NCBI GenBank assembly: GCA_047495785.1 | Contig: JBLDXI010000048.1 | Location: forward strand, 372,001-436,000 | DNA: 64,000 nucleotides | Direction: 5' to 3' | Origin: Lepidodermella squamata | Lineage: Eukaryota > Animalia > Gastrotricha | Shown here: positions 4,449 through 41,702 of the stretch, one piece after another | How the letters are laid out: every line of letters starts with the position of its first letter | Position numbering within the stretch: the stretch's first letter is position 1 | Notes under the pieces: model-generated | Told to the model about the DNA's origin: nothing | What the model saw: only the letters and a program-made list of their open reading frames with translations | Database searches by the model: none | Program-made: the position numbers and the translations under genes

Positions 4449-5627
4449 TCAAAGTCCAGGCGCAGCTAAAGCCTCAGCCATTGCGTTGAGAAACGCAGCC
4501 GCGGCCGAGTCGTCAATGCGGGCGCAATCGTAAGACAGCGTCACCGAGTAGAACGGCGCAAGAGTCGCGCCCTTCTTCCCGTCATTTCGCGGCACCAGCG
4601 CCAATGGAAGCTGCGTAACCGCCACAGCAGCAACCTGCGGCGGTTTTACAACTGCCGAAACGCGACGCAACACGCCAGCCGAGGCGTGAAAAGCTACGGA
4701 AACCGCGTTTCCACTCGCTTCTTGGCCCGAGGGCTTCTCGGCCTGCAGAAACGTTGCGACATCAACCACACTCATCGACAGGACTTTTCTCAACACGGCC
4801 TGGACCTCAGAGCCGTCTGGCTGTCTGAATGAAACTGCGATATCAGCGGCATTCAACTGTTCATTGCTCAAGTGGATTCGGGCTAAAACTTTAGCCGTTG
4901 TTTTCAGAAGAGTTGCGACTCGCAGATGGTGTAGGAAATTGGGCGGGCTCTGCTTTGATACAAGTGATTTAAGGACTGAATCGACGCGGGATAGGTTCAC
5001 GTCGATTGTTTGATAGGCGTGGGGAGCGGTGAATTTGGCAGTGGCTAGCAGTGAGCCGAGCTGTTTCTGGCTTGCGTTCAGTGCCAGGTCTGAGAATGGC
5101 GATGAGCCTGGGATAGCGCCGGGCTTCTGCTGTACTATCGAAGCAGCTGGTTTCAAGGCGGTTTGAGGTGTGGCTGCGGCGCCTGGTTTCAGACCAGAGG
5201 CAAGCGCGGCTAAGACATCGCTCTTCATCAAAGTTCCATGAGGTCCTAGAAACAGAAAAAAATTGTCAAAAATCACGAATCAGATTTTTGAGAGTTACAC
5301 TTTATCATGGAAAAATTCGCTAAAATATATGAGCAAAAAATTTTGGAACTCATTTATTCAAAAAATCTGAAACTTTTGAAAATATAATGCAAAAATTAGC
5401 GAAAGAATAAAAATCGGCATTTTTTCAGAAATGATTTCAATTTCAATTTTTCAATTTAAATGAAAATTTGAAAAATCGACAAAATTCAAGAAGTCTTCCC
5501 CAAGTTGTATTCTTTATTTATCGATAGATGAATTTAACAAAGAAATAGAATTACCTGTAGCTTTGATAAGCGTCGGGTTGAGGTTGTGCTGGTGGATGAG
5601 CAGACGAACGGCCGGACCGAACCGCAT
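4449..5627 (-). CDS. PDHX: Pyruvate dehydrogenase E3-binding protein (protein X)-like, lacking a lipoyl domain
   Basis: Exons 5627-5555 and 5245-4449. N-terminal E3-binding motif GPAVRLLIHQHNLNP..ATGPHGTLMKSDVL, then a 2-oxoacid dehydrogenase core fold with non-catalytic LSYDCARID in place of the E2 DHR motif. Confidence 0.75.
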
Positions 5628-6069
5628 GTTTCAAAGTTTCAAATCAGAAAATAACCTCAACCACCTAAAATTGAAACAAAAAATCAGTCATACTTCGAAA
5701 ATTGCGGTTTTACAGTATCCAATGACGTACAAGTAAGTGTGTATATGACACAAAGCGCCTAAATTCATTCGAAAGATACAGAAGAGAGAGAAATCATCAC
5801 GATGGTACTGACTATATATTTAGTTATTTACACCGTGATTGCTCATGACGATGCTTTGTTTTTATTTACTTCAAAATTCGTCCAAAGCGATTGAAGATTG
5901 ATATACAAGAATCAAACCCGAAGGACAACATTGTAAGATGATGATTGAGACAGGACGAAAAATTGTTGTACGCGTATGAAAAGAAGAAGAAGACGAAGAC
6001 AAAATGGGCAACCGCAACTACTTTTTCTGAGCAATTTTCGTGGTTATTTCATGTATTCACACCGATCGT

Positions 6070-8506
6070 TCAAGAATCGCTGGCGCTGCTTCGCGAATCG
6101 TCTTCGTTGGGCGCAACAGCCGCGGCGCCGTTGCCGTTGCGTGCCGGCGGCGAGGCGCTGCGAGACCGCGATCGACTCGAACGCGAGCCGCTGCGTGATC
6201 GGCTTCGAACCTTGCCGTTCGCCTCGCCGTTCGCCGCCTTGCCATTGCCGTTTTTGTTGCCGGGGCTGTGAGAGCGAGAGCGCGAACGCGAGCCACTCAG
6301 TGAGCGGCTGCGACTGCGCGAGGCCGAGCGGGATCGAGAGCGCGATCGTGATGCTTTAGCCGCTCCGTTCTTCGCGGCGGCTTTCGTTAGAATCAGCTTC
6401 GCGTCTTTGAACTCGGTTAGCGTCTCAAGAGCAGTGGCCACAGCTTTCTCGCTGTCGAACTCAACATACCTAGATAGAAAAACGAACAGGTATAGAAATA
6501 ATTTTTGATAATTCAGCCTAATTTGGCGGTATAAGCTTAAAAATAAGTATTGAGGGAGTTGTTCAACAAACAAATTTGAGATTTTACATTATTTAGCCTT
6601 AAATTAAGTACTCGGTTCAAAAAATAGATTTGCAATAAATTCTAATTTGGAAGATCTTGGTTGAACGAAATTTAAAAAAAATCGACTTTAACCTGAGAAA
6701 TCAAACGAAACAGCCCAGATTTAGGAATTTTCGAATAATTTTACATATTTTGCAAAAATACATCGAGTGGTCTTGAAACTCAGCCCGACCAAACATATCA
6801 AACTTCTAGACTACTCGATTGAAGTATTCAAGATGTTGTTGACTACTCTCCTTGTCGTAATTTTTCGAGACAGGATATCGTGTCGGAGCAAAGTTTAAAA
6901 GGAATTTTTTATCACGTCGCGATGTCGAAATAATTTTATAGTTGAGTAAATTTATCATGAAATTCCGAAAAATTTTAAAATAGTTGGACGAATCAAGTAT
7001 TCAATATTTAGTTCCGCTAAAACCAAGACCCGTTTTCGCATAACTGAATTTGAAAAAATTCAAAATATGGTCCAGCCGAGCTAGAAAGTAGCTTGAAAAT
7101 TGAAAAATCAATGAGCTTACCCTTTGCCATCGTCGTGAACTTCGCAACCAACAACCTTTCCAGCCGCACTCATGAACTCTTCCACTTCCTGAAAAACATG
7201 GATTGTTTAAAGGCAGGTCAGAAAATCATTTTAAAAAACATGAGCTGAACAAAACAAATCGGAAAAAAAATCAAATTAAATTCAGGCGTCGCTCGTTCCG
7301 CCGGAAAAGCGCGTCAGCTCGGTGGTTTCGGTGAAAATCGTACGAATGGAATGGAAAGGAAAGAATCGCACGGATTTGTCGAGTAAAAAGCGCCCAGAAG
7401 TCGAAAATCAATGGCGTACTTACATCATTAAAATCATCATCAATCACGGGCTAGTAGTAGTCTGTGCCAAATGTTGTTATCATCATCATGAACATCATGT
7501 TTACTTACGTAGAACATCAAAGCCGCACGTTAGGACAGCGCTGGTACGTACGAATTTGGATTTTTACGTTTACGCACGAACATGCACGAGTGTAGTGGTA
7601 GTGGTAGTGGTCATGGCGGTGGCACGACTTTGGCATCAAATCGCGAGCGAGCGAGCGAAACGAAACGAACGCGTTAGGCCACCAAAATCATCATCATCCA
7701 TAACGGACGCAAGGCAGACGAGAATTTAGCTTTTCAAGGAAAATCAATCAAAAATAATCAAAATTTTTCGAATTTCTCAAAAAATAGCTTTGTTTCTAGA
7801 AGATTTTTTACGAATGAAATTTATTTAAATTTTATATCACAGATGTACATTTGATTGAAAGAAACGAAAAAAAATTGGTCAAAAATCGAGCGCCAAGTGA
7901 TTGGTTGTTCCGCTCAACTTGTTCTCAGCTGAATTTACTTTGACATTTAGCTATAAATGAAATTTTCAGTCATCTTACCTTGCGACCAGCATCGGCCGGC
8001 AAATTTTCAATATCGACGCGGTAGATCTTAGCCGGAGAGCGGGTCGCTGATTTCTTTGAATCCTTGCGAGCCGAGGTCGATCGACTACGAGTTCGGTGGC
8101 GGGCGGGTGGCGAATCGCGACGGCGGGGTGACCGGGATCGGGAGCGGGAACGAGACTTGGACCGGCGGCGATCGCGGCGACCACGGGACCGAGATCGGGA
8201 CCTGGAGCGGGAACGGCGGCCTCCCCTGCGACCGCCGAAGCGTTCGCGCTCGACGACACGACGCGGTGGTCCCTTAGCATGCTCGATAGTCACGCGTTCG
8301 CCACACATTTCCTTCCCATTCATATCGTGGACGGCGTCATCCGCATCACGAGCGTCGTCGAACTCGACGAATCCGTAACCGTTTTTCAGCTGAATGTCGA
8401 TGATGCGACCGTAGGACTTGAAAAACTTCATCACATCTCGCTCCTGAGCTCGATGGGGGAGACGCCCGACATAAACACGGGCTCTTATGTTATGGCGACT
8501 AGTCAT
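6070..8506 (-). CDS. Serine/arginine-rich splicing factor of the SRSF4/5/6 (B52/SRp55) class
   Basis: Exons 8506-7979, 7188-7121, 6469-6070. RRM1 (RVYVGRL..YGRI..LKNGYGFVEFDD.RDADDAV), an RS tract, a second RRM (YRVDIENL..GYVEF) and a C-terminal RS tract. Confidence 0.9.
7424..7627 (-). other. Two candidate stop-containing (poison) cassette exons in SR-gene intron 1: 7627-7509 and 7461-7424
   Basis: Each has a CCTAAC branch point (7678-7673; 7534-7529), an AG acceptor (7629-7628; 7463-7462), a GTAAGT donor (7508; 7423) and an in-frame TGA. Confidence 0.65.
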
Positions 8507-8672
8507 CTTAAAATACCCTAAAAATTACAGAAAATATTTAGCAAATTTCACTTTAATAATTACTATTATAATAAACAAAATCAAAGAGCAGCAGCCGCAC
8601 CAGGAATGGCAGACAGAGAAAAAGCAGATTAAATTGGATAATTAAGACACACAATTGCGGTTTGCAGAAGAC

Positions 8673-9797
8673 CTAGAAAAACTTTTTGTGGAGAATGCGA
8701 GCACCTTCGGAATCATATTCCTTTTTCGAAACCCACATGCGTTTGAAAGTGTCCAGCGAGGCCAAAATTGACCCGCCCATCCACGTCGAGTACAACCGTT
8801 CAGCGGGCGCGGAAATTTTGATTTTAATATCCTTAGGCGCCAACTTTTTCACCTCGCCTAAAATTCGTTCGCCGAATCCTTTCAGTAGAGTGCAACCTCC
8901 TGATAAAATAATGTTTGAATACAGCACCTTTCGCAGTTCAAGATCAGCGCGTTGAATGCCGAAAGTTAGCAACTCGTGAATTCCAGGCGATTCATCACCG
9001 ATGAGATCAGGGCGGAAGAGAACTTCCGGAGCGCGGAAACGGCTCATACCTAACTCGAATTGACTGCCGTCGGGCAGGGTATAGGCCATCTTCTCCGGCG
9101 GATTGATTTCGTCCTTTTGAATGTTCGAAGATACAAAGCAGGCGCGCTCTTTGATTTGACGCACAACCTCAAATTCGGCACTGGTTTTAAAATGACGCGC
9201 CTCTTTTCTTAACAGGAGACGCAGATAGTTAGTCACGTCACGCCCGGCAATATCAGCCCGCTGAATGCTGTGAGTGAGGGCATAGCCCTCGTAGATTGGC
9301 ACGGCATGAGTGACACCATCACCACTGTCTAAAACAATGCCTGTTGTTCGACCAGTTGAATACAAGCTGAGAACAGCTTGAATTGACATGAAAAGAGCCG
9401 GCGTTCCGAATGTTTCAAAGAAAATCTGAGCAGCGCGCTCGCGATTGCGAGCCGGGTTCAGTGGAGCTTCGGTGAGCAGAACCGGATGCTCTTCCGGTTT
9501 GATGTACATTTGATCTTTGGAGCAAAGCAGGAAGTGCCAAATGCGTTCCATGTCGTCCCAATCAGTGACGATTCCATGTTCCATCGGATAATTTATTCTA
9601 AGCAAGCCGCGGTGCTCCTCTGCACGTGGTCCAATGAAAGTGTCACCTTCGAGTCCGCCGGCCATGACACGGACGTGTTTGGGTCGACCAACGTAGTTTG
9701 GAAAGATATACTTAGGTATTTGGTCACCAGCAAAGCCTGCTTTGATCATGCCTGACCCGTTGTCCAGTACAATGGGCTGATTAGCGAGGACATCCAT
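8673..9797 (-). CDS. ACTR1: Centractin / actin-related protein 1 (dynactin Arp1), intronless CDS
   Basis: 374 aa with Arp1 signatures [36 protein letters not shown] and [25 protein letters not shown]. Confidence 0.95.
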
Positions 9798-9913
9798 GTT
9801 TCCTCAAAAATAATACTGTCAAATTGTCTAGATGAAGCCACGAAAAACCCAACGCAATTAATACTTAAACAAAGATATGGCTATGGGACTAGCAGTAGCA
9901 ACACTTCGAAATT

Positions 9914-10861
9914 CTGAAAGAGAACTCGCAATGCAAGCCAATTAATTACAAATCGAAGGATGAAGATGACCGCGGATCACGTTTCACTCTTTTATTACGC
10001 TTTATTCTTGTATAGCGTCTTAACCTGACTACGAAAGCCAAGCGCCATTGCTATTAACTACCAGAAACGCCCAAGGCGAAAAATTCCCAGTCATACGTAA
10101 GACGCCAAGAGCAAGGTAAAATGCGAAATTCGATAATGCAGGGGAAGTGACCTCCTATCGTTCTTCACCCCTCAAGGGTTTACGGACGGCGGTTGGTGAG
10201 AATGTCGCGAGAGAAAGATCGAGGTAAGCGGTAGGCGGCGAGCGTTTCGGCAAGCCCAAACCCCCATCAATCAATCAAAGTGCCATCTGCAGCCTCAGAT
10301 TTTCATTAATTTATGACCCATTTAAAAATAAAACTCTTGTGGTAGAAAATTTCCCTATTTTATAGATGTTATATCAAGGTTTGCATTTAAATTTTTTATA
10401 ACGATTCATTTCTTTTATACAGGGTTAGTACAGTTCCAGTTTGGAGTGGGACTTCAAGCGGGTCATCGTTCTCACCTGTGACGCTGAGTTCGCGGGGTTC
10501 ATCGACGCCTTAGTTCATCCGTAGGCGCAGGGCGCAAGAAAGAAAACTTTTCTTTTGCATGTTTCTCTCGCTTAACCGCTTTATTACTTTCGAAGTAAGT
10601 AGCTTGTTCGTTATCAGTTTACTGACAATGCAATCTACGATTGGCTACGAGCATTTCTTAGCCGAGGATACAAGCATCAGTAGGAATCGAGCGTTTTACT
10701 CTAGGCTTTAGGTTCTGACATTAGATAGCTATGAAGTTTTGAGGTTTCTGCTGACTCCCATTCGCCTGAGGAATTCCTCAAGAATTTAGAATTGGTCTTC
10801 TTTCAAAAATCCTGCCGCCTGTTGATATTGAAATTACTATTAGTATTTTCATTTTTTGTAG
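9914..10861. promoter_or_regulatory. Divergent promoter region with cis-spliced 5'UTR exons of ACTR1 and TMEM259
   Basis: The two genes are head-to-head. Minus-strand donor GTATGA at 10096 pairs with acceptor 9915-9914. Plus-strand donors GTAAGC (10224) and GTAAGT (10595) pair with acceptors at 10422 and 10861. Both start sites are inferred near 10100-10220. Confidence 0.55.
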
Positions 10862-10927
10862 CGTGTCGCAATCTTGGTATTTACTAGACATTGATTACGT
10901 ATTTCGGCAAGTTGTGCTATCTTCCTC

Positions 10928-12621
<1,694 letters not shown>

Positions 12622-13176
12622 TTAAGTTATACTGGAAAAAATCGCGCATGTGCCAGGCTAATATCTCTCACTCTCTCCTGTTACGTTTTTTTCGTATAAT
12701 TTCGGAAAAATATTTGAATATTTTATAAGAAATGACGAGAACCAGTTTTTTGTTCTTTCCATCCCTGATTTTTTTGGACTGAAATATGTGCGCAAGACAC
12801 TCAGATTGTTGCTTCAATGATAAATGGAAGCTACTTGACTTGCAAGTCTCTCATTCCCGGAATACAGCAGCAACTCAAATTGAAGTGTGGAATTTCTTCC
12901 GTTACGTCAGCTATTAAAACGATGTAGATATGTCGTGGGAAAAAATAATTCGACTAAAATATATGGTGAAAAACTGTTCGTTGTTCATGTCGTTTAATCG
13001 TTGTTGTTTTATATGTCGTTGCCGTCTTCTTCTTCTCCTGTACAGCAAATGAAAAACCGGGCCGGAAAAACGGCCCTTCATTGACTATATTGATGGAAAA
13101 TTCGAGGAAAGATGAATAAATTTTCGCTATTTTTTCTACGGAATTTATGATTTTTTGTAATTTTTTAGGATTTGAA

Positions 13177-13937
13177 ATGTCATTTTTTGCTCCTGAGGTG
13201 CGTGTTCGCAATGCAAACGGGCGAAATCTTGCTGAATATCTCAATGAAACATTCTTCAAACTTCGAGGGTTAGCTTTTATTGTTTTATTATTCGATTCAT
13301 AAATTTTTATATTTTTTAGAAGTGTTGTTGAGGTTACTGTCGTAGCCCGGAAAGATCTGCCTAATAATGTAGCAGAAGAAGCGATGAAACTAGTCGAAGA
13401 AAATATGCGAGAACTCTACGAGTCGTCTTCATGGGGCTGGGATCGACCGAAAAAATTGGCCGAATTAACCGATGATACGGCCAGATTTCTACTCGTTCAA
13501 GAATCGGAATCAAAACGACTAGTCGCTTTTGCTCATTTTCGCTTCGAACTCGAAGGCTCGCAAGCTGTTTTATATTGGTAAGCAAATTATTTCGATTTTT
13601 TTTTAAACGGAAACGGCTCGAAATTTATTTGAGCGCCAAATTCTGAATTTTTGTAAATTTTTCATTATTTTTATTTCTCAGTTATGAGCTGCAAGTTTCG
13701 AGGCAATTTCAACGAGGCGGTCTTGGTAGCTATATTCTGAAAAGTCTCGAATTGATCGCACTGAAGGCTCAAATGGACAAGATATTGCTCACAGTATTTC
13801 CGCATAATACGGCGGCTGTTTCGTTTTATACGAAAAAACTCGGCTTCCACGTCGATGAATCGTCGCCGTGGCAAATCGGCGAACGCGGCGCTAAATACTA
13901 CATTCTATCACTTGAGTTGCAAAATTCCTACTTCTAA
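13177..13937 (+). CDS. NAA40: N-alpha-acetyltransferase 40 (NatD, GNAT family)
   Basis: Exons 13177-13268, 13320-13577, 13682-13937. Motifs NMRELYESSSWGW, VAFAHFRF, VLYCYELQ, QRGGLG and LTVFPHN..A..FY. Confidence 0.9.
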
Positions 13938-14231
13938 CCTCATCTTTGTTTCGATCGAAAAAATCTCAAATTAATTGTTTCGAGCTTGTCCCAATTCGTT
14001 CCTGTGTTAACGCGTCGAATGATCTGGAATTATTTGAGCAACATTTTACAGCGTTCTGTGGTGATATTTATCCGGCTTTTCTCCTCTAATTTTTCACATG
14101 CCAACGAAAAAATTTCGACACTTATCTCTTGTTTAGTTTCATTCTGGTCTTATTTGCAAGATCCCGAAGGGACGTTAAAAATTTATTAAAATTTTTTGTT
14201 GAACTAAATTTTTGTTTTATTTTAGATTTTA

Positions 14232-17200: not shown

Positions 17201-18082
17201 GTCAAAGCTGAAGTTGACCAGCAACTGGTGCCATTTTTGAAATTCTCGAACATCCCGGGCAACGATGACCAGCAGCCAGAACAACACCTAATGCCGGTGC
17301 AGCCGCTGATTTGCCAAGTCGCCGAATGCTACGCCCTATTCACGTACCTCGTATCTCGTTTGAGAAACGAAAACTCCCTGCCAAGTGCCGATTTAGTCCT
17401 AACATCCTTACTGAATCAAGTCGATGTTGTAGCGAAGTCGAAATCTTCGCTGAATCCTTACTCGACGGTGCGGAGATTTTTGGAACAAGTCACGCTACGT
17501 CTTCACTGGTCGCGCATTTCAATCGCAAATTTCGACTATCGAACGAGCATAAAATCGATAACTCACCTGAGAGAGATCGTTCTGATTGCTTTGAACGATT
17601 TCCCGTCTAACCCGGCGTTTTTACAAGGCCTAATCGCTATCCGAGAGCCGGCGTTCATGTCGTCGAGTTTCGTCAAATTCACGCGATCTATGTCGCATAA
17701 AATCAACCAACCCAGCGCTTGGCTAGCGATTTTAACGGCTTTAATCGCTAAAATAGACCCAAGCTCGATTGGTTGTGCTGAAAATATGATTCGGTCTTAC
17801 TTCGAAAAATCGCTAGTTTCACCCAATTCGCTGAGAAGTTGCGTTATCTGGGCGTTTTACATCGCATTCGAGTCGAAAATCGGGTCGAAAAAGCTGGAAA
17901 ATGTGCTGTTTCGAGCGTTGCAAGCTTGCCCCTGGGCTAAAGAGATGTATATGGCACTGGCGAGGACGCAGACCAGTCAAGCGAAACTGCAGGACGCCGT
18001 TGATATGGTTGTTGAAAAGGGCTTGAGACTGTGTACTCTGGTCGATGAACTGGACACGTTTCCCGGTGTGCCAAACTGGTGA
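14232..18082 (+). CDS. NRDE2: Nuclear exosome regulator NRDE2
   Basis: Exons 14232-15450, 15632-16809, 17201-18082. Motifs MSLFPAY, DWLKNDSF, P.NVQLWLDFVDFQ, EKKLAILDRAL, EAGFTERA, DDPERQVVFDDI, RALQACPWAK and EKGLRL. Confidence 0.92.
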
Positions 18083-18469
18083 AAAAGTTGCTAACAAAGT
18101 GATACTAAAACGATTCATCATTGGAATGCGATGTTTTCTAGCCAAAAAGCTTCAAAAAATCCAAGTATTCCCTAATTTTCAACCCATTCAACCCTTGGGT
18201 TAAAATAAATTTTAAAATCAAATTAAATTTTGAATAATGCACAGAATTCCACCGAATTTCCTAATTTGTGGAGAAATTGAGAAAAATGTGATTTTTCTAA
18301 GCTTTTTCGCTAGAAATTCGCAAATTTTTACACCTCATTTTATACCTTTAAAAAAATATTTAAAAAATTAATTGCTCAATTTCTTTTGAATTTATCTATT
18401 TATTTTCCAATAGAATTTTAATCTTAATTGTTGTGATTGATATTTGTTGATTTTTCAATCGATCGAATT

Positions 18470-22169: not shown

Positions 22170-22537
22170 AATCAAAGAGTTGTGTAGAGAAAATATGCCT
22201 CGAGAAAATTGATAGTCATTTCTAAATGCGAGAAAATGGCTTGAAAAATGATAGAAAATGACCAAAATCTCTTTAAAATTTTCATAAAATAAAAATTTCG
22301 AAATTCTGTAATTTGGAAATAAATTGTCAATTTTGAAGGGAAATTTCATTTTTCAGCCATTATTATTGCAAACCGTCTCAAATAATTCCATCAAAAATAT
22401 GAAGAAAAAAATGAAAAAATCCATTTGAATTTGATAGCCTAATTTTAAATTAATTTTTTCTTCTTTGTATAGATGGTCGGGTAATTTTTTTACGTATTTG
22501 TTATAATTTATTTGTGACCTATCATCGCTCTTCGCCA

Positions 22538-31500: not shown

Positions 31501-34500
31501 TTAGCCTTCAGCAAATTATTCCTTACCCGGCATTGTCTGAACTCCTATTATTTAGATTATTTGCAAGCCACTAGAGCTATTACAAGTGAGGAACGCACAC
31601 ATTGACAGCATAATAAAATTAGTTGAATTAATTCAAAACAAATTGCGGAAAGCTTTGCGTTTTTGCGCCTCGGCGAACTCGACGAGCTGCTTCTGCAGCA
31701 TCCGAGTTGATTTCGAAGTTTGACGATCCTGAAACCTGCAATACAGGCCCGGCCTTTCAGCTCGACTTGGGAGTGATGGGCGGCCTGGGCCACTCAGCGA
31801 AACGATGATGACGATGGTGGAATGAATGCAGGGGCCTTGCTGGGCCTTGCTGGGCGGGTTCGCAGTCTTCTTCTCATCGCTTTCGGACACAGCCTTATGG
31901 CTCTCGGACCAATTCCGGAGTTGGAGCGAGTTCATAGAACCGTCAAGCCGCACATTTGAACCGAATTCCTTCATTCATTCATCAATATGATAAAGGAGAG
32001 ATATAAGAGGCAGAGATTTACATACACGCATATGAAATATTGCATATTTTTTACACTTTGCGTGAGGCTCTAAAGCACGGAAATTCGCGATTCGCTAGTT
32101 AGCAGTAACAGCATATTGGCGAAGCATAGTACATTGTTACCGTGGTAGTAATATTCACCAAGGCGTAGAGCGACGTATCTTCACTCGATTTTCGTTTTCG
32201 TGAGGCATTGGCCGCTAATGCTGCTGCCTGCCGAGCTGCAAACTGGTGTTGTTGATATGCCCGAGCAGCAGGCTCTAGCTGGAAAATCATATCATTCAAG
32301 AGCTACTTGAGTCCGCGGCACCTTTGGTTGATCTCCGATAGTATGGTCAGCTGGCCGACCAGTATATCTATTGCTGGCTTCGTTTGTTACATTAATCTAC
32401 AGAAAACAAGGTGAACAAGTGAAATGTTTGTAAACTCGGCCCGATAACATTTCCTGCCAATTTATAACCGCCGCCATATTCTTGATGTTTATAGGCCGAG
32501 TCGGCTTGTAGCGAAATTCGGTATTTTCCCATCTCGCACCGATGTACGCGGTCGATGGGACGGTGGCCATGGAAATCGACGTGATCGACGTTATAGAGAT
32601 GACAAGCCTCTTCGAATAATGGGCTTGGACCAGCCCTTCACGACATATATTTGGTTGAAGAGGTCATATCTTCGGCGCTTAGATTTCAGCTTTGATACTG
32701 ATAGCGGGCTGTTCAACGAGTTTGGTAGTAATGAGAAAGAAGGGATTCATAAATGCCTGAAATCATTCTTGTCAAATCCTCAACCTTTTGGGACTAGGAC
32801 GGTTTTAATGCCATCAGATCCTCGAGATATTTCCCAACGTGCAAATGCCTCGCGTTCAATCGAAATGCAAGCAGGAGGTCATCGTCATCACCAATTATGA
32901 CAAAATGATCCCCGTCGTGCCAAAACAGGCCGTGGTCATCGGCCTTGAAAATGTTTCGAAAAACTATAGATTTTCGCTTTTAAAAGAGCTGAAGGACTCT
33001 CTACAGAACTATTCATTTTAATACAGCGTCCCTAATTTGACTCGCCTTAGGTAACTTTCACGGCTGAGGAAAAGCCATTACAGGAGATCACCTAAAATTC
33101 CGAAAACAATCGAAAAATGTGCATAATGGTTTGCAATGGCTTGAAATTACTCCAATTTATAATAGAATATTTTGATATTTCAAAAATGGTTAAATATTAA
33201 TTGAAAAATTATCTTTTTAGAGTGCTCAATTTCATCCGCCACTGGATTTTGAATCACTCCTATGATTTTTCGGACGACCCGCAACTGCGCCAAGACCTCG
33301 TCGACTTCATCAAAGCCATCCGAGCGCCTCACCTGCGCCGATGGGTCTCACGCCTGTTGTCGCACATCGAGAAAATCGGCGAAGAAGCGACGACCCGGCT
33401 CGTTGTTTTCGACGAAGATCCGCCGGCGATTTTGTACCATTTGAAAGACCGCCCCCTCGGCCTCATGACCATGCACCCTGCGGAACTGGCCCGGCAAGTC
33501 ACTTTGCTAGAATTCGCGGCCTACTCGAAAATTCGCCCATGCGAGCTCATCGCAACCGCCTGGACAAAAGCGGCGAAATACGAAAATTCGCCCAACGTCA
33601 TGAAGGCGATTGAATTTCACAATGAACTGACGTTTTGGCTCGAGCGGAATATAGTCGAGACGAAAAATTTAGAGGAGCGGGTTGCGGTGTGCGAGCGGAT
33701 CGCGGATATTCTAGCCGAATTTCGCCGGCTGAACAATTTCAGCGGGCAATTCTGCGTTGCCTCGACGTTTTCGTCCGGCTGTGTCGGCCGGCTGGCGTTG
33801 ACGAAGGAGGCGATTGCGAAGGAGAAGTGGGCGCTGATCGAGGAGGCGATGGCCCTGGGCGAGAATCATAACCGCATCTATGCGCAGAAGTTGCGGATGT
33901 GCAACCCGCCGTGCGTGCCTTTTCTCGGCATGTGGCTGTCACGGCTGTTGCACGTCGACGAGGGAAATCGGGATTATCTCACTGATAAAGGTAAGCTTTT
34001 CAAATGGAGGAATAAAATAAATTAAAATAAAATTGAATTAAAAAATTTGAAATTTGAAATTTGCAAAATTAATAAAATATTCAATTATTTAAAAAAATAT
34101 TTAAAAATTAAGTTTCCTTGATTAATTGTAGTTTTTATAATATTTGATGAATTCATTTTTTTAGGTGCTGAGAAGCCGGTGATAAATTTCACGAAATGGC
34201 GGCGAACTGCTGATTTTGTGACGGAGATTCAACAGTACCAGAACACGCCGTACAACTTGGAGGTCGAGCCGGAGATTTGTGCGTTTTTCGAGCGGTTGGA
34301 CGCGCGAGGCGACCGGGAAATGTCGCGCGATGATTTCGATGAGTTGCTGTACCAATTGTCGTATGAAATTGAACCAAGGCAGAGGGGTAACCCGAGCAGT
34401 CCGCCGGTTTTCCCGCGCAAATTCGACTTTCCACTCGCTGCCCCACCGGCGATTTCAGGTATGAACTTCTATCATTAGCAAATGGCAAGAATTAAACAAA

Positions 34501-35375
34501 TTCCTTCAAACTCGAATTCCAAACTTGTTTGGCAAATTCTCAAAATTATTTTTTATAATATTTGCTGAAATTATCAGATTTGAATTTTTAAAATTTTTAT
34601 ACACAACAATTTTATATTCACATTTTCGACTTTTTGGTTGGCTGTAAAAAAACTAGAAAAAATAATTTCTCGCTTTGATTTTTTAGCCGTTCAAGCCGCA
34701 GCCGCGACAAACGGCCGCCGGGCGAGTCGAGACACGCTGGCGAGTAACAGCTCGAACACGAGCAGCAACTCGAACCTGGCGAACCCAGTGAAAGCCCCGG
34801 GCAGTGCTACGCGCCGGGCCGCTCGAGCCGTGCCGTTAGTCCTCGCACCGGCCGCGTCTTTCAACCACCAAGACCACGACTCGTCGACCGACTCGCGCGG
34901 GCCATCGTCCGCCAGCTCGCTGCCCAGCACCCCCAGCACATTCCCGACTCCGCCCTCCTCGGCCTCCATCGGCCATTTGCAACACTTTTTCGCGCAACTG
35001 CCGCCGTCAAATCCGTCGGGGCAAATCCCGCCGCCGTTACCGCCGAGACCGGCCGACCACGCCGGGGCGAGTTCTCTGCTACCACCACCGCCGCCGGGTC
35101 TACCTTCAAGGCCACTACCCTCGCCCTCGTTTTCGACAAATTCGGGCTCCAGCGGTTATTCAAGCTCGAGCGCTAGTTCGAATGCCCCGCCGGCCTTACC
35201 CCCGCGATCTCTACCGCCGCTCCCACCGTATTCTGCCTCCACTAGCGGCCCGACTTCAGCGGGTCCCAGCACCGGGCCCGGGGTGGGCGTCACCCGGTTC
35301 GAGTACCCGACACCGCCCCAGGCTTCGTCGCACCGCCGCCGCCGCCATCTCGTGAGGGCTCGCAGTGATGACTAA
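22538..35375 (+). CDS. SOS: Son of sevenless Ras GEF (histone fold, DH, PH, REM, CDC25, proline-rich tail)
   Basis: Exons 22538-23035, 25595-25895, 26980-27947, 30659-31416, 33221-33990, 34165-34458, 34687-35375; all phases are consistent. Motifs IKGATLIKLIERLTYH, TTYRSFCKP, PVQFRVLN, HPAELARQVTLLEF, NPPCVPFLG, INFTKWRR..EIQQYQNTPY and PxxPPR. Confidence 0.95.
23314..23345 (-). ncRNA. Minimal type I hammerhead ribozyme-like motif of the Penelope-element kind
   Basis: Minus strand UUAGC-CUGAAGA-UGGGCUC-GAAA-C-GUC-GCUAA: both core boxes, a GUC cleavage triplet, a 5-bp stem I and palindromic ACGU in place of stem III. Confidence 0.6.
23500..24609 (-). pseudogene. Degenerate antisense coding fragments of unknown family inside SOS intron 1
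   Basis: Acceptor-led 123-aa ORF at 24607-24236, and a second acceptor near 23819 followed by a Cys-rich then AVELGQLLN..SSTASTAI reading. A related segment lies at about 28500-28790. Confidence 0.4.
24955..24985 (+). ncRNA. Degenerate hammerhead-like motif
   Basis: CUGAUGA-AACUCAGU-GAAA-U-GUU with an imperfect stem I (AAUC/GAAU), followed by AATAAA. Confidence 0.3.
28896..29223. mobile_element. hAT-type MITE
   Basis: TIRs CAGAGTTGTCCACGGG and CCCGTGGACAACTCGG, 8-bp TSD ATATAGAT (28888-28895, 29224-29231) and subterminal CGGGC repeats. Confidence 0.88.
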
Positions 35376-36684
35376 CAAATAAAAACTAAACAATCTCGAT
35401 TTTATATATTTCACGTTTTCGCTGAAAATTCATGCTCATGTAAAAACTCGGTTTTAACAACCCTTGAAATGCCCCACAAAAATTGAGTTGAAATTGTTGA
35501 AACTTTGGAAATTCAATAATGAAAAGGTTGAAATTTCCTCAGTATTTGTGAGGCATTTTCGTGTTTTAAAGATTGTATTCGGCCAAAGCGTTTTATGGGT
35601 CAATTTTCCCGATTTTTCTCGATTAATTTATCGTGAATTTTGCAATGTTGCGATGATTTTTTCCCGATTATCATATATTATGGATACTACTACTGCTTCC
35701 GTTGAACTGTGCGGTATTTTCGTCTTCCCGGATCGGGATTTTTCCCATTTTTGAATGTGAAAAATTGACGTGTGATTTTTCTCGCGGTTGTTGATTACGT
35801 GTGGCTTATTCCTGGTTCATTTGCTGGTATAATATTTGATGTTCGGGTGCGTTTATTATGGGTCGATGAACTGAAAAAACTCGGATGATTTTACTAATAT
35901 TGACTAAATTATGATAAAGCTATAAAACTAAATGGTGACTGCTGTTACATATTATATTGATGCATGTGTTTTTTGCGTATTTTTTCTGCTCGCTGTGCTG
36001 AAATCGCGTAATTCTCTGCTGATTTGAAACAATAAAAATGAGCTTCCTATCGTTGCTGAAATCTATAAACAGTTATACAAGATGAAACGTGTTTCGTGTT
36101 ATTTGAGAATAAATTCGAAGAAACTTTGGTTTTAACTGCTTGTATTATTCAACTTTGTGTTCTCTAGGCCTTTTGTTGTTTGATTCAAATGATAGCGATG
36201 TACCAGCTCGGGCTTAACAGTTGAAATGGGATAACTCCTGTGGCGTTCTCAAGCTGTATCTGATCGATAAAAACGAGGTATTGCTATAATTTTAATTATT
36301 GAAGCAAAATGAGTACAACTAAATTCTTCAGAGGCCAAGACGCAAATAATTCACTCAATCCTTTAATTCACGAAGTATATTCAGGAAAAATGATGAATGG
36401 AGAAGGTAGTTTTGCGACGACGAGGCATTTTATTCGGCCAATCACAGCAAGAAAGGAAAATTGTTTGCAACAAGGACGTATAGAACCTCTTATACTCAGT
36501 ACTTGCCATCTCAATTTTGTTTGGTTCCGAGTTTACATGAGAAACCTCTGCTCAGCGATTTTATCGTTAACTGTGAATGTCATGAAACGGGCAATTAATT
36601 ACGCAGTGGTCCGACTTGAACTGAGCGGTAGGGGGCGAGAAAACATCTGGTTAAAAAATTACAAGTTTTTTTCAACTGGCATCT

Positions 36685-37470
36685 TCAACAAAATGTGTCA
36701 AGGCAGTGAAACACGATGAGCCTGCGAAACTTTCGCCTCAGAATCGCTCGCCCCTGACGTGCAAGAAACACGTAGCAATTAAATTTCATTCCGTAAAATT
36801 GGCTCACCAACGCCGTTTTTCGCACCCATCGAAACACGCCATCCATTGCAAGAGCAACCCACTTCTGTTGTAAGCACTCGTCGGTGAAGCCCGCTGTGTG
36901 AATAACCTCCAACAAGAGGAAGAAAGGGCGTGTAAATCAGATCCACGTCACATCCATGAAAAACTTGGAACCAATCAAATGACTTGATATACTAGTTATT
37001 GAACGAATCATAGTCTACTGCTGATAAATTGAAGACAGCATTCAGAGTGTCTACCGAATTATGTATAATTCTGACAAAGGTCGTTGTGGCCAGCCAGGCA
37101 GGACCGTAAACTCATTTCGGAAATCCGAGGCAGCGATAAGCCATGCAGCGACTGGGCGAAAACAGAATCGTGTTCGTACTCGTTAAGTTTGATAGACGCC
37201 GCAATAGCAAGCGGCACCAGATTTTCCATGATTTTTTCAGTGAATGAATCATCAAAACGTACAGAAATTCACAGCCGTTATAGAGCTAATGTCACCGACT
37301 TGAAACGAAGGTTCAGAAACGAAGCCGCAAGATCGTTAAATATGACTACATGATCTCTGTCATCGTTGAAGTCTACAATCACAGATTCGGCAATCGGTAG
37401 ATACGTAGGTAGCGAAAACACATCGGACCAACTCGAAAGAGGGTTTCGTCCATCGCCATAATTGTTATAT
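36685..37470 (-). pseudogene. Decayed coding sequence of unknown family between SOS and ACTR10
   Basis: About 135 protein-like codons (YNNYGDGRNPLSSWSDVFSLP..RFKSVTLAL*RL*ISVRF..LSLPRISEMSLRSC) with two in-frame stops, plus the ORF at 36915-36685. Confidence 0.35.
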
Positions 37471-37704
37471 CAAGACTAATTGCGAAGTTATTGTTTTTAG
37501 GTCACTGTAAATGTGGACGATTTCTGGCTGTGCGCAATGAACTGTGCGTTTGTCGAGCTGCTTTCTCAACCTATGACTATTGTTCAGTGACTCCCATTTT
37601 TTGTGATTTTTCAATTATTTTGGTGTCAAATAAAATGCTATGCAATAATTCTACCTGATGAGCTATTCTGTTTTCCATTTTAGACTTTGTTTTGCGATCA
37701 AGTT

Positions 37705-40700
37705 ATGTCAGTTATCACTTCGTCGACCGGTTCCAGTTCCGGTTCGGTGATTGGCGGTACGACGTTCGGCTCATCTTCATTGACTTCAGACCTGAGCTCG
37801 CGCCTGAGAACATTCAGTTTCTCCGAGAAAACTACCGTTGTCATCGAGCTCGGTTATCGATTTACCAAGTTTGCTTTCCAATTGTCAAGCGAAGGCTTAA
37901 ATAACGTTTGTTATTTTTATTTCCAGGGTCGGATTTGCAGGTGAAGCGAAGCCTCGAAGCGTGTTTCCGACTAAAGTTGTCTCCCCAACCGGCGGTCAGA
38001 TTGAAAATGCCAAAAATGTGAGCAATTTCATTTTCCTGCTCATTATTAAAACAAAATAAATCTGAAAGTAGTCTATAAATGCACATACAACCGAACTAAC
38101 GCTGAAGAACTGTCATTTTCTCAATTTTGATTAATGCAAAGTCTGGTGTTTAAATGCATATAAACCCCTTGAACCCCTTAAAAGCACACTGGTTTAGCGC
38201 GGGGTTCCTGCTCTCTGTCGAAGTTGTAGGTTTTGCCAACCTCAAAGTGTTGTGTTTGCTAGCAGCTGCCTTAGAATAGTTGGAGCTGAAGGTAAATTCT
38301 CCAACGAGAGAGCAGCTTTCGTACCGGTGAGCGACGTGAGATAACTAATCGGATGAGCGAATGGGCGCGATGTCAGCTTTGTCCATGACCTGGTGAGCTT
38401 GCATCAGCGAATTCGCGAGAGCAGGCAGATTATGTTCCAGTAGAGCGTATAGCGTAGCGGCTAAATTTGCTTTAAGTTTGATTCGAGACCATTGCTTGCT
38501 GACGGGTAGAGTGCCGCGGTTAAAACTTTAGTGCCGGCCCGAACCCGGTCCATCAGAGGACATGATCCGGAACTAACCGCTCTGAAAACGAAACGAAAAT
38601 AGCCGCATTTATTTCACTTTTTATTGGGCCTCTCAACTCTCAATAATTCATCTCATAGCTCATAGCTAAAACGTTGATCATTCCCGCAAGAAAACGAAGC
38701 TTGAAATGAACGATCAAATGAAAGATCAAAAACTTGTTTTTTTACTAACAACCCCCGTGCGCATTCCCTTTCATTCAAGGCATGAGTTTCATTTACGTTT
38801 TCATTCATTTATTTTCGGTCAACCGCCGGGTTTGGCCACGGCGGCCCAGCCCGCCGCGGTTATAACCGGCCTGGCGATTAACTACGGGCCAACGGTTAAA
38901 TTTTGGCCCGTGGCATCTCTACTGACGGGTAGAAGGGAGAAGGCCTGATACCACCGCGTGATTCTCGTTTTTGAAGAATTCGATAAACGCAGCAGCATGC
39001 TTATTTCTCTAATGCGAAAGGTTCCCAGTAACCTTGAACTCGGAATGCGAACAAGCCAACTTGCAGCGCATTTAACCCTTAGCCGCCGGCGCAATGACGT
39101 GTTAACTCGAGCACCTTTCAGAAAATCCCAGAAAATCAAGAAGAGGCTAAAATCAAATTCTGAGTCGGCAGAAAGTCTTACATTTAGCCTTAGATTGAAA
39201 GCCGAACCTCTTTTTCAGAAGAAATTTACCTGGGTTGCCGTTGCTATGACGTGTTAACGCGTTTTCATGACGTGTTAACAAGTCATTTAAAATTTTTCTC
39301 ACAATTTTCGACCTGGTCAGAATGGCTTTGAAAATTTGGATTTTCGGGGAGTGCTTGTTTCTTGCTATTGATTTATCATAATTTATGACGCAACAATGGG
39401 TTCGATAGCCCAAATCCTCCGACCACGGTGAATTTTCTCCGGAATTAACGCGTGTACACGTCTTTGGCGGCTAAGGGTTAAGTTGGACACAATACACCTG
39501 TACAGTTTGGGCCGTCTCGCCGCGCCTGGGGAAGGGGCAATATGAAAGTGGCATATGCTTTCCCGGATATCAGCCGTCTTTGAACCCAAAATGAATAGTT
39601 TTCTAATTAGCTTTTAAAGCAACATGTAGCTAAAATGAATAATCCCAGGTTGGAGCCCGGCATCAGTATTCATCAATAAACGAAAAAGCCGAAATATATA
39701 AGAAAGAGTGGGGAAAATGAGGTGCTATAGTGCTGGAACCTTTTAAGATTTGTTTCTCCATTTAAAACTGTGCTGTTTCGCTTAGATTTTGGACATTGAC
39801 AACGAAGCACAGCTGCGGTTTGTGCTGATCGATTTCATCAACCACCTGTTCATCCGCCACATTCTGCTGACGCCTAAAGACAAAACCGTCATCATCTCAG
39901 AGCCGCTATTCCTCCCGCTATGGTTCAGAAAAATGCTACTCAGCGTCCTGTTCACCGACATCCAAGTCGCGTCAGTTTTCGTCGCACCAGGCCCGTTGTT
40001 CTCACTTTTCGGCCTCGGCTGGCGGTCAGGCCTTGTCGTAGACTGCGACGCGTTTGAAACCAGCGTAATCCCAGTCTACGAAAATGTCGCCCTGATCAAA
40101 TCAGTCGAATCAGCCGCAATCGGTTACCGCCAAATCGTCGATAACCTACGGTCAGATCTAGTCGAAAACCACAACTGGCCGCGGGCTGAACTCGACGATT
40201 CAGTCATGGATGACGTAATTTCGAAGACCCATTGCTTTATCGATAGATTCGACCGGGCGAAATTGAGGAAGGAGGGCAAAGAACCGAGCCCGAAAGCTGG
40301 GGATTCGACTTACCAATCGTCCTTTGGCGGAAGATCGGCGCCTTTGGTTGTACCCGGGTCGGTTCGGGAAAGTTTGGGCGAGGCACTTTTTGTCCCAGAT
40401 TCTGACACTGGGTCGATAACCCAACTGATTCTAAACGCCTTAGATCGGTGCCCGATTGATGCTCGGAAAATTCTAGCCGATCGCATTGTTCTAGTCGGAA
40501 GTGTTGTGGCATTGCCAGGTTTCGGTAATCGGTTATGTGCCGAACTGGAGAGTGCGGTTAAAACCGGCGAGATCAACGGGCGCCGGCTGCCGGCTAGCGT
40601 GACCAGCCTGAAGTCGTTCAAATGCGCCCTGTCGCCTGTTCCAAGTGAAAATTTAACGTGGTTTGGCGCGGCTGTGTTCGGTTTTCTCGAGATCGCGACT

Positions 40701-40877
40701 CAGCGGACCATAACTAGGGATAAGTATTTTTCGGAGATTCGCCTGCATGGCGAAGGGGCGCAGTTTTTCTGTAGTAAGGTGCTCACTGCGGATTGGCTGA
40801 CTACGCCGTCGCTGATCCCGGCGGCGCCTGGTCAAGAGAATTTGGCGCCCACTGATCCGAACATTTCGACATGCTAA
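37705..40877 (+). CDS. ACTR10: Actin-related protein 10 (dynactin Arp11)
   Basis: Exons 37705-37868, 37927-38017, 39786-40877. Motifs EKTTVVIELGYRFTKVGFAGEAKPR, FIRHILLTPKDK.VII.E, CPIDARK.LA and WFGAAVFG. Confidence 0.9.
38507..38921. mobile_element. hAT-type MITE in the ACTR10 intron
   Basis: TIRs TAGAGTGCCGCGG and CCGTGGCATCTCTA, 8-bp TSD CTGACGGG (38499-38506, 38922-38929). Confidence 0.85.
39018..39742. mobile_element. Degenerate TIR element of the same family as about 399-1395, hosting a nested MITE
   Basis: Termini AAGGTTCCCAG and CTGGAACCTT with TTAA on the right flank. The right-hand 180 bp are homologous to 1236-1395. Confidence 0.5.
39076..39477. mobile_element. piggyBac-type MITE
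   Basis: TTAA-CCCTTAGCCGCC ... GGCGGCTAAGGG-TTAA: a 12-bp perfect TIR with TTAA TSD. Confidence 0.88.
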
Positions 40878-41569: not shown

Positions 41570-41640
41570 CAGAATCGTAATCATTAATTAGCACAGAATA
41601 TACGCCTATAAAAGAGATGGTTTCGATTCAAATCAATACC
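41570..41640 (+). promoter_or_regulatory. TATA core promoter of SDR copy 1, conserved in copy 2 at about 48217-48290
   Basis: CAGAATCGTAATC..TAATTAGC..GCCTATAAAAGAGATGGTT is shared by both copies. TATAAAA lies at 41607-41613 and 48253-48259. Confidence 0.75.
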
Positions 41641-41702
41641 AACACTTTTTCGCACAGTTTCGATCTCAATTTAAACATTTATTTCTCTTACTAACGACAG
41701 AA

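What the first reader, a model, noticed from the sequence alone, without database searches (positions are those of the whole stretch)
4449..40877. Candidate bidirectional pair of SL trans-spliced operons: nine housekeeping genes from one promoter region
Seen: three minus-strand and six plus-strand genes diverge from about 10.1-10.2 kb. The first gene on each side has paired cis-spliced 5'UTR introns. Each downstream gene instead starts shortly after a polypyrimidine-AG with no convincing upstream donor. Acceptor-to-ATG distances are SR gene 8518 (11 nt), PDHX 5665 (37 nt), NAA40 13168 (8 nt), NRDE2 14225 (6 nt), TRMT6 18413 (56 nt), SOS 22472 (65 nt) and ACTR10 37683 (21 nt). ACTR1 stop to SR-gene ATG is under 170 nt of mostly AT-rich DNA. 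Known: this layout marks operons resolved by SL trans-splicing in nematodes, tunicates and flatworms. Inference: polycistronic transcription here, in contrast to the TATA-containing genes right of 41 kb.
Basis: partly seen in the sequence, partly recalled or inferred. Interest (0 to 1): 0.8.

Follow-up and report, generated by a model that had tools for sequence, protein, structure and literature searches.

The report
Conserved back-to-back operon-like gene clusters
Eight or nine unrelated housekeeping genes of a tiny invertebrate (probably a gastrotrich) run outwards in two tightly packed files from one shared gap. Three upstream messages end only 19-30 bases before the next gene's splice-acceptor signal, and a distant relative keeps the gene order, so they are probably operons cut apart by a pasted-on leader, but I did not see the leader here.

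Summary
Observation confirmed. All seven acceptor coordinates are exact T-rich ...TAG sites 6-65 nt before start codons, and the relative begins its orthologous proteins the same way. The genes are an E2/E3BP-like gene, an SR factor and ACTR1 (minus strand), then membralin, NAA40, NRDE2, TRMT6, SOS and ACTR10 (plus strand).

New evidence:
1. RNA contigs give real poly(A) tails for ACTR1 at 8537 and membralin at 13143. These lie 19 and 25 nt before the SR and NAA40 acceptors. The NAA40 contig ends 30 nt before the NRDE2 acceptor.
2. A distant relative (TRMT6 54%, NRDE2 about 45% amino-acid identity, non-coding DNA not alignable) keeps order and orientation of eight genes. Synteny stops at the cluster's left end.

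Limits:
- No contig reached any acceptor from downstream, so no leader, no precursor and no 5'UTR intron was seen here.
- ACTR10 lies 2.3 kb of unassigned DNA after the SOS stop, so it is the weakest member.

The operon reading is partly supported: about 0.6 for the core, about 0.3 for all nine genes from one promoter region. The scan had already reported leader trans-splicing and similar clusters on other DNA of this genome. I did not re-test those notes. I found no paper on this for gastrotrichs. It is a new member of a known kind.

The parts
4449..5627 (-). E2/E3BP-like ('PDHX') coding region. Exons are 5627-5555 and 5245-4449. It starts at the E3-binding domain and has no lipoyl domain.
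   Evidence: Pfam 2-oxoacid_dh. PDB matches to DLAT and PDHX. The orthologue in the relative carries E3_binding and begins at the matching place: the exon-1 match starts at the window ATG, 5627. Splice sites read.
5665..5666 (-). Predicted acceptor (AG) 37 nt before the PDHX-like ATG. The nearest upstream AATAAA is at 5866, about 200 nt away.
   Evidence: No RNA was laid here.
6070..8506 (-). SR splicing-factor gene: RRM1 plus RS in exon 1 (8506 to about 7975), a second RRM-like exon at about 7187-7117, and a last exon with an RS tail ending at 6070.
   Evidence: Pfam RRM_1. Sequence reading. Matches to the relative at 8426-8262 and 7190-7116.
8518..8519 (-). Predicted acceptor (AG) 11 nt before the SR ATG.
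   Evidence: It lies 19 nt after the ACTR1 poly(A) site.
8537..8557 (-). ACTR1 3' end: ATTAAA at 8557-8552 and the poly(A) addition site at 8537.
   Evidence: The X1 contig ends at 8537 with an untemplated run of 19 T on the + strand. Hexamer.
8673..9797 (-). ACTR1 (centractin) coding region, a single exon of 374 aa. It is the first gene of the minus-strand file.
   Evidence: Pfam Actin 1.9e-125. 95% identical to the relative's orthologue. RNA contigs in X1 and X3.
9798..10927 (.). Divergent gap between the ACTR1 and membralin start codons, the presumed shared promoter region. It holds candidate 5'UTR exons and introns. T-rich AGs lie at 9803 (5 nt before the ACTR1 ATG) and about 10861 (66 nt before the membralin ATG).
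   Evidence: No RNA joints and almost no RNA depth here. No sequence conservation with the relative's 630-nt gap.
10928..12621 (+). Membralin (TMEM259) coding region, the first gene of the plus-strand file. Introns are 12016-12068 and 12409-12465.
   Evidence: Pfam Membralin. Both introns appear as GT..AG joints in X1 and X3. Stop at 12619.
13115..13143 (+). Membralin 3' end: AATAAA at 13115 and the poly(A) site at 13143.
   Evidence: The X3 contig ends at 13143 with 22 untemplated A. The X1 contig ends at 13105 followed by a cDNA-synthesis oligo.
13167..13937 (+). NAA40: acceptor AG at 13167-13168, ATG at 13177, stop at 13935. One intron, about 13577-13680, is confirmed.
   Evidence: Joint 13576>13681. 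NAA40 identity through the relative's orthologue against PDB 4u9v. Orthologous exons at 54-79% identity.
14185..14208 (+). NAA40 3' end region: ATTAAA at 14185, and the RNA contig ends at 14195 (another piece ends at 14208).
   Evidence: No poly(A) tail was captured here, so the exact site is inferred.
14224..18082 (+). NRDE2: acceptor AG at 14224-14225, ATG at 14232, stop at 18080.
   Evidence: Pfam NRDE-2 on two exons. Orthologue at 41-57% identity..
18412..22169 (+). TRMT6 (Gcd10p family): acceptor AG at 18412-18413, ATG at 18470, a 2.4-kb intron (19457-21887) and stop at 22167.
   Evidence: Pfam Gcd10p. Orthologue P0001 at 54% identity. AATAAA/ATTAAA at 18204/18222, about 190-210 nt before the acceptor.
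22471..35375 (+). SOS (Ras/Rac exchange factor): acceptor AG at 22471-22472, ATG at 22538, many exons with 1-2.6 kb introns, stop at 35373.
   Evidence: Pfam RhoGEF, RasGEF_N, RasGEF. Best named hit is 'Son of sevenless 1'. Collinear with the relative's nearly intron-free ORF.
35376..37682 (+). Unassigned 2.3 kb between SOS and ACTR10, with AATAAA at 35378, 36031, 36108 and 37629. The last lies 54 nt before the ACTR10 acceptor, the same spacing as at the tight junctions.
   Evidence: Its ORFs have no Pfam match. There is only a weak Tc1/mariner-like lead for ORF 36309-36716.
37682..40877 (+). ACTR10 (Arp11-like): acceptor AG at 37682-37683, ATG at 37705, last exon 39789-40877. The 1.8-kb intron holds a small inverted-repeat element.
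   Evidence: Pfam Actin. Orthologue P0002 at 57% identity..

Best explanation
The locus is a deeply conserved pair of divergent, operon-like gene files in a compact invertebrate genome. Notes from this scan, which I did not check, name the gastrotrich Lepidodermella squamata.

Proposed mechanism:
1. RNA polymerase II starts in the 1.1-kb gap between ACTR1 and membralin and reads outwards in both directions.
2. Each upstream message is cleaved and polyadenylated about 20 nt after an AATAAA or ATTAAA.
3. A short capped leader made elsewhere in the genome is trans-spliced onto the T-rich TAG acceptor that follows, giving the downstream message its 5' end.

Shown here:
- The exact acceptors.
- The real 3' ends of ACTR1, membralin and (less exactly) NAA40, 19-30 nt before the next acceptor.
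- Conservation of eight genes' order and orientation.

Inferred: use of the acceptors for trans-splicing, joint transcription, and a single shared promoter region.

The core I commit to is ACTR1>SR and membralin>NAA40>NRDE2. The E3BP-like gene, TRMT6 and SOS probably belong (PAS-to-acceptor gaps of about 150-210 nt). ACTR10 may be a separate unit, or may follow an unannotated transcript.
For: - Acceptor coordinates and quality.
- Composite signal-acceptor-ATG motif, 7 observed against 2.0 +/- 1.5 in shuffles.
- Untemplated poly(A) at 8537 and 13143, and a contig end at 14195: these lie 19, 25 and 30 nt before the acceptors at 8518, 13168 and 14225, and 24-37 nt before the next ATG.
- Signal-to-acceptor spacing of 39, 53, 40 and 54 nt at four junctions.
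- The relative's contigs L001/L002/L003 keep E3BP-like<SR<ACTR1 | membralin>NAA40>NRDE2>TRMT6>SOS, with stop-to-ATG gaps of 105-560 nt. Non-coding DNA is not alignable.
- Synteny ends at the cluster's left boundary.
- The relative begins its orthologous proteins the same way, and T-rich AGs precede the start codons there too.
- Leads only, not re-tested: scan notes s1-374120, s1-374127 and s1-421510 report a leader at such sites elsewhere in this genome.
Against: - No leader was seen.
- No contig bridges an intercistronic gap, so no precursor was seen.
- The T-rich stretch after a poly(A) site could be a cleavage downstream element followed by a chance AG.
- Three junctions have 150-210 nt, and one has up to 2.3 kb, in which a promoter could sit.
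- Conserved order can also reflect shared regulation without joint transcription.
Confidence: 0.6

Rival explanations
1. Each gene has its own promoter, embedded in or overlapping the 3' end of the gene before it. Transcripts may or may not be trans-spliced. The cluster is kept together by overlapping regulatory DNA or by chance. The T-rich AGs next to poly(A) sites are cleavage downstream elements.
For: - No precursor and no leader was seen.
- There is room of 150-210 nt at three junctions and 2.3 kb before ACTR10.
- U-rich elements after cleavage sites are a general feature of polyadenylation (established knowledge).
- Genes right of 41 kb have TATA-type promoters, so the genome does use ordinary promoters.
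Against: - At three junctions only 24-37 nt separate the upstream mRNA end from the next ATG. A start site there would need all its promoter elements inside the upstream 3'UTR.
- The acceptors at TRMT6, SOS and the E3BP-like gene lie far from any poly(A) signal, yet are as strong as the others.
- Eight-gene collinearity survives saturation of the non-coding DNA.
Confidence: 0.22
2. There is one primary transcript per side, resolved by ordinary cis-splicing. A shared non-coding first exon from the central region is joined alternatively to the acceptor of ACTR1, SR or the E3BP-like gene (and likewise on the other side). This resembles the ChAT/VAChT type of nested locus and needs no leader.
For: - Candidate donors exist in the central region at 10225 and 10597 on the + strand and about 10026 and 9864-9870 on the - strand.
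- The acceptors have no donor nearby.
- No leader was seen.
Against: - No such joint appears in either RNA run, although three ordinary introns in the same stretch are recovered.
- Each upstream gene has its own poly(A) site just before the next acceptor, which fits cleavage plus trans-splicing better than exon skipping.
- Scan notes report a leader elsewhere in this genome (not tested).
Confidence: 0.08
3. A mixed picture. Only the tight pairs (ACTR1>SR, membralin>NAA40>NRDE2) are operons. TRMT6, SOS, the E3BP-like gene and ACTR10 are independent, possibly trans-spliced, units that stay adjacent.
For: The spacing falls into two classes: 39-54 nt from signal to acceptor at the tight junctions, against 150-210 nt or more at the others. 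ACTR10 lies 2.3 kb after SOS.
Against: The relative has much shorter gaps at the 'loose' junctions: NRDE2 stop to TRMT6 ATG is 105 nt and TRMT6 stop to SOS ATG is 203 nt. They could therefore be operon junctions that expanded in this genome.
Confidence: 0.1

Closest known systems
Caenorhabditis elegans operons (SL2-type, and the rarer 'SL1-type' with no spacer)
   Same: Same-strand housekeeping genes, with upstream 3'-end formation just before a T-rich trans-splice acceptor placed a few bases before the ATG. Clusters of up to eight genes whose order is conserved. The 19-30 nt from poly(A) site to acceptor lies between the SL1-type (adjacent sites) and the usual spacer of about 100 nt (my knowledge of Blumenthal's work, not re-read here).
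   Different: No leader was seen here, and nothing tells whether a specialised downstream leader (SL2-like) exists. The spacers are shorter than the nematode norm. The animal is not a nematode.
Tunicate operons (Ciona, Oikopleura) and flatworm polycistrons (Schistosoma)
   Same: Very short or absent intercistronic spacers, a single type of leader used for both operon and non-operon genes, and a mostly housekeeping gene content (my knowledge). By published phylogenomics cited in PMC6468455, gastrotrichs are the proposed sister group of flatworms.
   Different: Membership in the same evolutionary origin is untested. The leader sequence and the SL RNA gene were not examined here.
Bidirectional promoters of animal housekeeping genes
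   Same: Two first genes (ACTR1, membralin) diverge across 1.1 kb (630 nt in the relative), and this arrangement is conserved.
   Different: Here each arm may drive a whole file of genes. Promoter activity and start sites are unknown, and no sequence motif is conserved between the two species.

Membership tests
Spliced-leader-resolved operon | Two or more same-strand genes with short intercistronic distances | tested here: met
   Stop-to-ATG gaps are 166 nt (ACTR1>SR), 442 (SR>E3BP-like), 555 (membralin>NAA40), 294 (NAA40>NRDE2), 387 (NRDE2>TRMT6) and 368 (TRMT6>SOS). The mRNA-end-to-ATG distance is 24-37 nt at three junctions. SOS>ACTR10 is 2.3 kb and does not meet the feature.
Spliced-leader-resolved operon | Downstream mRNAs begin with a common non-genomic leader joined at the acceptor | tested here: inconclusive
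No contig of either RNA run reached 8518, 13168 or 14225, and no loose end lies at those places.
Spliced-leader-resolved operon | Upstream gene's cleavage and polyadenylation site lies just upstream of the downstream trans-splice site | tested here: met
   Poly(A) tails at 8537 and 13143 and a contig end at 14195 lie 19, 25 and 30 nt before the acceptors.
Spliced-leader-resolved operon | A polycistronic precursor spans the intercistronic region | tested here: inconclusive
   No contig bridges any gap. Assembled contigs drop rare species, so absence proves nothing.
Spliced-leader-resolved operon | SL RNA genes (leader, donor, Sm site) exist in the genome | not testable with these tools
   There are none in this window: Rfam gave 0 hits. 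Only the window is readable. Scan notes s1-393973, s1-384353 and s1-407453 report such genes elsewhere; I did not check them.
Spliced-leader-resolved operon | Downstream genes lack their own capped transcription start | not testable with these tools
   This needs CAGE or cap-selected reads. The contigs cannot show starts.
Spliced-leader-resolved operon | Cluster kept intact in evolution (supportive, not defining) | tested here: met
   Eight genes are collinear and co-oriented in a relative with 30-95% amino-acid identity and saturated non-coding DNA. Synteny ends at the left boundary.
Bidirectional promoter pair | Divergent first genes less than about 1 kb apart that share regulatory DNA | tested here: inconclusive
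   The ATG-to-ATG distance is 1131 nt here and about 630 nt in the relative. Start sites and sharing are unknown.

The most novel reading that the evidence does not exclude
Gastrotrichs have true spliced-leader operons. This locus is a pair of divergent operons that has stayed intact across a deep split within the group. Only 19-30 nt separate the poly(A) site from the trans-splice site, which implies tightly coupled cleavage and trans-splicing. Gastrotrichs are the proposed sister group of flatworms, so this would make it directly testable whether leader trans-splicing and operons were inherited from a common ancestor of the two phyla or arose separately.
Probability: 0.5. Interest if true: 0.62.

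Novelty: new member of a known kind. Interest (0 to 1): 0.5.

Why it matters
Animal operons resolved by leader trans-splicing are known from a handful of phyla, and how often they arose is an open question. I found no paper linking gastrotrichs with spliced leaders, trans-splicing or operons. The Lepidodermella squamata genome paper mentions none of them.

This window offers a clean test case: mapped 3' ends, exact candidate trans-splice sites, and an orthologous cluster in a distant relative. A few RT-PCRs or one long-read cDNA run could settle the matter.

The practical consequence concerns annotation. Gene predictors that expect one promoter per gene will mis-join or truncate such genes.

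Tried and rejected
- Exact look-up of the ACTR1 product in public assemblies: not on record.
- Word searches with the TRMT6, ACTR10 and SOS exons, hoping for RNA-derived proteins of the same species whose contigs would show 5' ends. They returned only one metagenomic relative and generic SOS homologues, so there was no route to the leader.
- Two scans of JGI metagenome contigs with membralin and TRMT6 alignments: no relative found.
- Alignment A2 was built on rough coordinates and was not used.
- The relative's ACTR10 contig starts inside exon 2, and its SOS contig ends inside the RasGEF region, so SOS>ACTR10 adjacency could not be tested.
- Rfam and tRNA scans of the window: nothing.
- Alignment of the central promoter region with the relative: only chance-level words.
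- A strict search for short introns gave too few cases for an acceptor weight matrix. I used a pyrimidine-count criterion instead.
- The bacterial-type promoter/terminator scan is irrelevant for this organism.
- ORFs in 35.4-37.7 kb and in the large introns: no Pfam family. There is only a weak Tc1/mariner-like Atlas lead, and no convincing terminal inverted repeats around it.
- A further composite site at 54789 (-) heads only a 36-codon ORF, so I dropped it.


Full report
**What is there**

The window is compact animal DNA: GC about 0.43, introns of about 50-100 nt and T-rich acceptors. From a 1.1-kb gap at 9798-10927 two gene files run outwards.

- Minus strand: ACTR1 (single exon, 8673-9797), an SR splicing factor (6070-8506) and an E2/E3BP-like 'PDHX' (4449-5627).

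The identities rest on Pfam, matches to solved structures and a named SOS hit. To the left of the E3BP-like gene the next ORFs lie on the other strand. To the right of ACTR10 comes a short-chain dehydrogenase gene with a TATAAAAG box about 95 nt before its ATG.

**Checking the observation**

Every one of the seven acceptor coordinates is exact.

Such strong AGs occur about 88 times per strand in the window, so about 9% of random 70-nt stretches hold one.

I also counted a stricter composite: a poly(A) signal, then a strong acceptor 20-75 nt later, then an ATG that opens a frame.

**RNA evidence**

Only one run search and one read-laying were allowed. I laid three runs on 8350-14349 so as to cover three acceptors, both first genes and the central gap.

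X1 and X3 are RNA. They show three GT..AG joints (12015>12069, 12408>12466, 13576>13681) and untemplated tails. X2 looks like the genomic source. The useful results are the 3' ends:

| Upstream gene | 3' end seen | Next acceptor | Distance |
|---|---|---|---|
| ACTR1 | 8537, 19 untemplated T on the + strand | SR, 8518 | 19 nt |
| Membralin | 13143, 22 untemplated A | NAA40, 13168 | 25 nt |
| NAA40 | contig stops at 14195, no tail captured | NRDE2, 14225 | 30 nt |

The signal hexamers lie 39, 53 and 40 nt before those acceptors. An AATAAA at 37629 lies 54 nt before the ACTR10 acceptor.

So at three junctions only 24-37 nt separate the end of one message from the next start codon.

The data did not give any 5' end. 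No contig reached an acceptor from downstream, and no loose end lies at 8518, 13168 or 14225. No contig bridges a gap. No joint was seen in 9800-10930, where X1 depth is 0-3.

The library is poor in 5' ends. The first 50 nt of the ACTR1 coding region and the first 180 nt of NAA40 are also missing. It also contains inverted chimeras (the 'opposite strands' joints). These absences therefore say little.

**Comparison with a relative**

A word search with the TRMT6 exon found one relative at 54% identity in two ENA metagenome assemblies. Its 27-kb contig carries E3BP-like < SR < ACTR1 | membralin > NAA40 > NRDE2 > TRMT6 > SOS, in the same order and orientation.

Amino-acid identities from tblastn:

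| Gene | Identity (%) |
|---|---|
| ACTR1 | 95 |
| Membralin | 62-84 |
| NAA40 | 54-79 |
| NRDE2 | 41-57 |
| TRMT6 | 54-71 |
| SOS | 48-65 |
| E3BP-like | 30-54 |

- Non-coding DNA cannot be aligned, and intron positions differ. The relative's SOS is almost intron-free, whereas this window has 1-2.6 kb introns there.
- The orthologous proteins begin the same way (for example MSLFPAY for NRDE2 and MSF for SOS). T-rich AGs lie 0-60 nt before most of the relative's start codons. The candidates before its E3BP-like gene (about 85 nt upstream) and before TRMT6 are weaker.
- Beyond the E3BP-like gene, the relative's next 8 kb (GBP genes and others) has no counterpart in the window, so synteny stops at the cluster boundary.
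- The right-hand end could not be tested. The relative's contig ends inside SOS, and its ACTR10 lies on a 3.9-kb contig that starts inside exon 2.

**Weak points of the nine-gene reading**

1. SOS stops at 35373 with an AATAAA five bases later. The ACTR10 acceptor is 2.3 kb further on. The DNA between has no recognisable gene, only a weak transposase-like lead. ACTR10 may still follow some transcript that ends at about 37650, given the signal at 37629, but its link to SOS is unproven.
2. At the E3BP-like gene, TRMT6 and SOS the nearest poly(A) signals lie about 150-210 nt before the acceptors, which is enough for a small promoter. The relative's gaps there are shorter: 105 nt from the NRDE2 stop to the TRMT6 ATG.
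3. A U-rich stretch right after a cleavage site is also a normal polyadenylation element, so the three tightest 'acceptors' are not independent evidence.
4. The 5'UTR introns proposed for the first genes are plausible on sequence. The donors are at 10225 and 10597 with acceptors at 10423 and 10861. A similar GTAAGG donor and acceptor exist in the relative. They have no RNA support. ACTR1 in both species has an acceptor 0-5 nt before its ATG, which could equally take a leader.

**Most likely mechanism**

Polymerase starts in the central gap and reads both ways. Each message is cleaved about 20 nt after its signal. The downstream RNA is rescued by trans-splicing of a capped leader onto the T-rich TAG that follows within 19-30 nt.

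I put this at about 0.6 for the core (ACTR1>SR; membralin>NAA40>NRDE2, with TRMT6, SOS and the E3BP-like gene probably included). I put it at about 0.3 for all nine genes from one promoter region. The rivals are own promoters embedded in upstream 3' ends (0.22), a mixed picture (0.10), and alternative cis-splicing from shared first exons (0.08).

**Relation to earlier notes of this scan**

Other agents reported, on other pieces of the same genome, a leader of about 30-33 nt at predicted acceptors. In one case it lay 28 nt after an upstream poly(A) site (s1-374127). They also reported SL RNA genes in the rDNA spacer, and they named the animal as probably Lepidodermella squamata. I could not re-test these, so I treat them as leads.

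My spacing of 19-30 nt matches theirs. Like s1-368352 and s1-411497, I found conserved order but no leader. The window's GC of about 0.43 equals the 43% published for L. squamata (PMC11660948), which is only circumstantial.

**Literature**

No paper in the held library joins gastrotrichs with spliced leaders or trans-splicing; the one hit is an unrelated Euglenozoa review. The L. squamata genome paper contains none of the words operon, trans-splicing, spliced leader or intron.

Spliced models were searched exon by exon, by reference. 

Noticed in passing
window 4449-5627 (-); L003 11653-12615: The E3BP/'PDHX'-like protein starts directly with the E3-binding domain and has no lipoyl domain in either species. 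The catalytic-site motif reads DCARIDD, with Cys where active E2 enzymes have His. It looks like a truncated, non-catalytic core subunit.
   Followed up: partly
window 8537-8605 (-); L003 9737-9780: The ACTR1 3'UTR shares two exact 13-mers (TGGTGCGGCTGCT and GTGAAATTTGCTA) and CTTTGATTTT with the relative, although all other non-coding DNA is saturated. Their order differs between the species. In this window the second 13-mer ends at the poly(A) site. It may be a regulatory or processing element.
   Followed up: partly
window 19427-19588 and 19915-20072: The end of TRMT6 exon 1, its splice donor and the start of the intron are duplicated 490 nt downstream at 85% identity, inside the 2.4-kb intron. 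A further exact 54-nt repeat lies at 19762-19815 / 20609-20662. Possible explanations are an alternative donor or a footprint of an insertion.
   Followed up: no
window 39072-39481: A 410-nt element with perfect 16-nt terminal inverted repeats, TTAACCCTTAGCCGCC, sits in the ACTR10 intron. The outer TTAA followed by CCCTT resembles piggyBac-type ends, so it is probably a miniature DNA transposon.
   Followed up: partly
window 35376-37682: 2.3 kb between SOS and ACTR10 has no recognisable gene. ORF 36309-36716 gives only a weak Tc1/mariner-like Atlas lead. An AATAAA at 37629 sits 54 nt before the ACTR10 acceptor, as if an unannotated transcript ended there.
   Followed up: partly
window 22538-33710 vs L001 11433-14475: SOS is almost intron-free in the relative (one 2.4-kb ORF), but in this window the same stretch is split by introns of 1-2.6 kb. 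The SR gene likewise has two introns of 700-800 nt here against about 270 nt in the relative. Either this genome gained or expanded introns, or the relative lost them.
   Followed up: no
window 41570-43121 and 48216-49713: Two short-chain dehydrogenase genes are tandem paralogues at 84% DNA identity. The first has a TATAAAAG box about 95 nt before its ATG and no upstream acceptor, unlike the cluster genes.
   Followed up: no
window 8673-9797 and 37705-40877: Both actin-related subunits of dynactin (ACTR1/Arp1 and ACTR10/Arp11) lie in the same locus on opposite arms. This may be co-regulation of partners or a coincidence.
   Followed up: no
window 8350-8431, 9869-9959, 14208-14307 (run X1): Several contigs of RNA run X1 switch strand or continue as the reverse complement of nearby sequence. 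These are inverted chimeras of the library or assembly, so 'opposite strands' joints in this run should not be read as biology.
   Followed up: no
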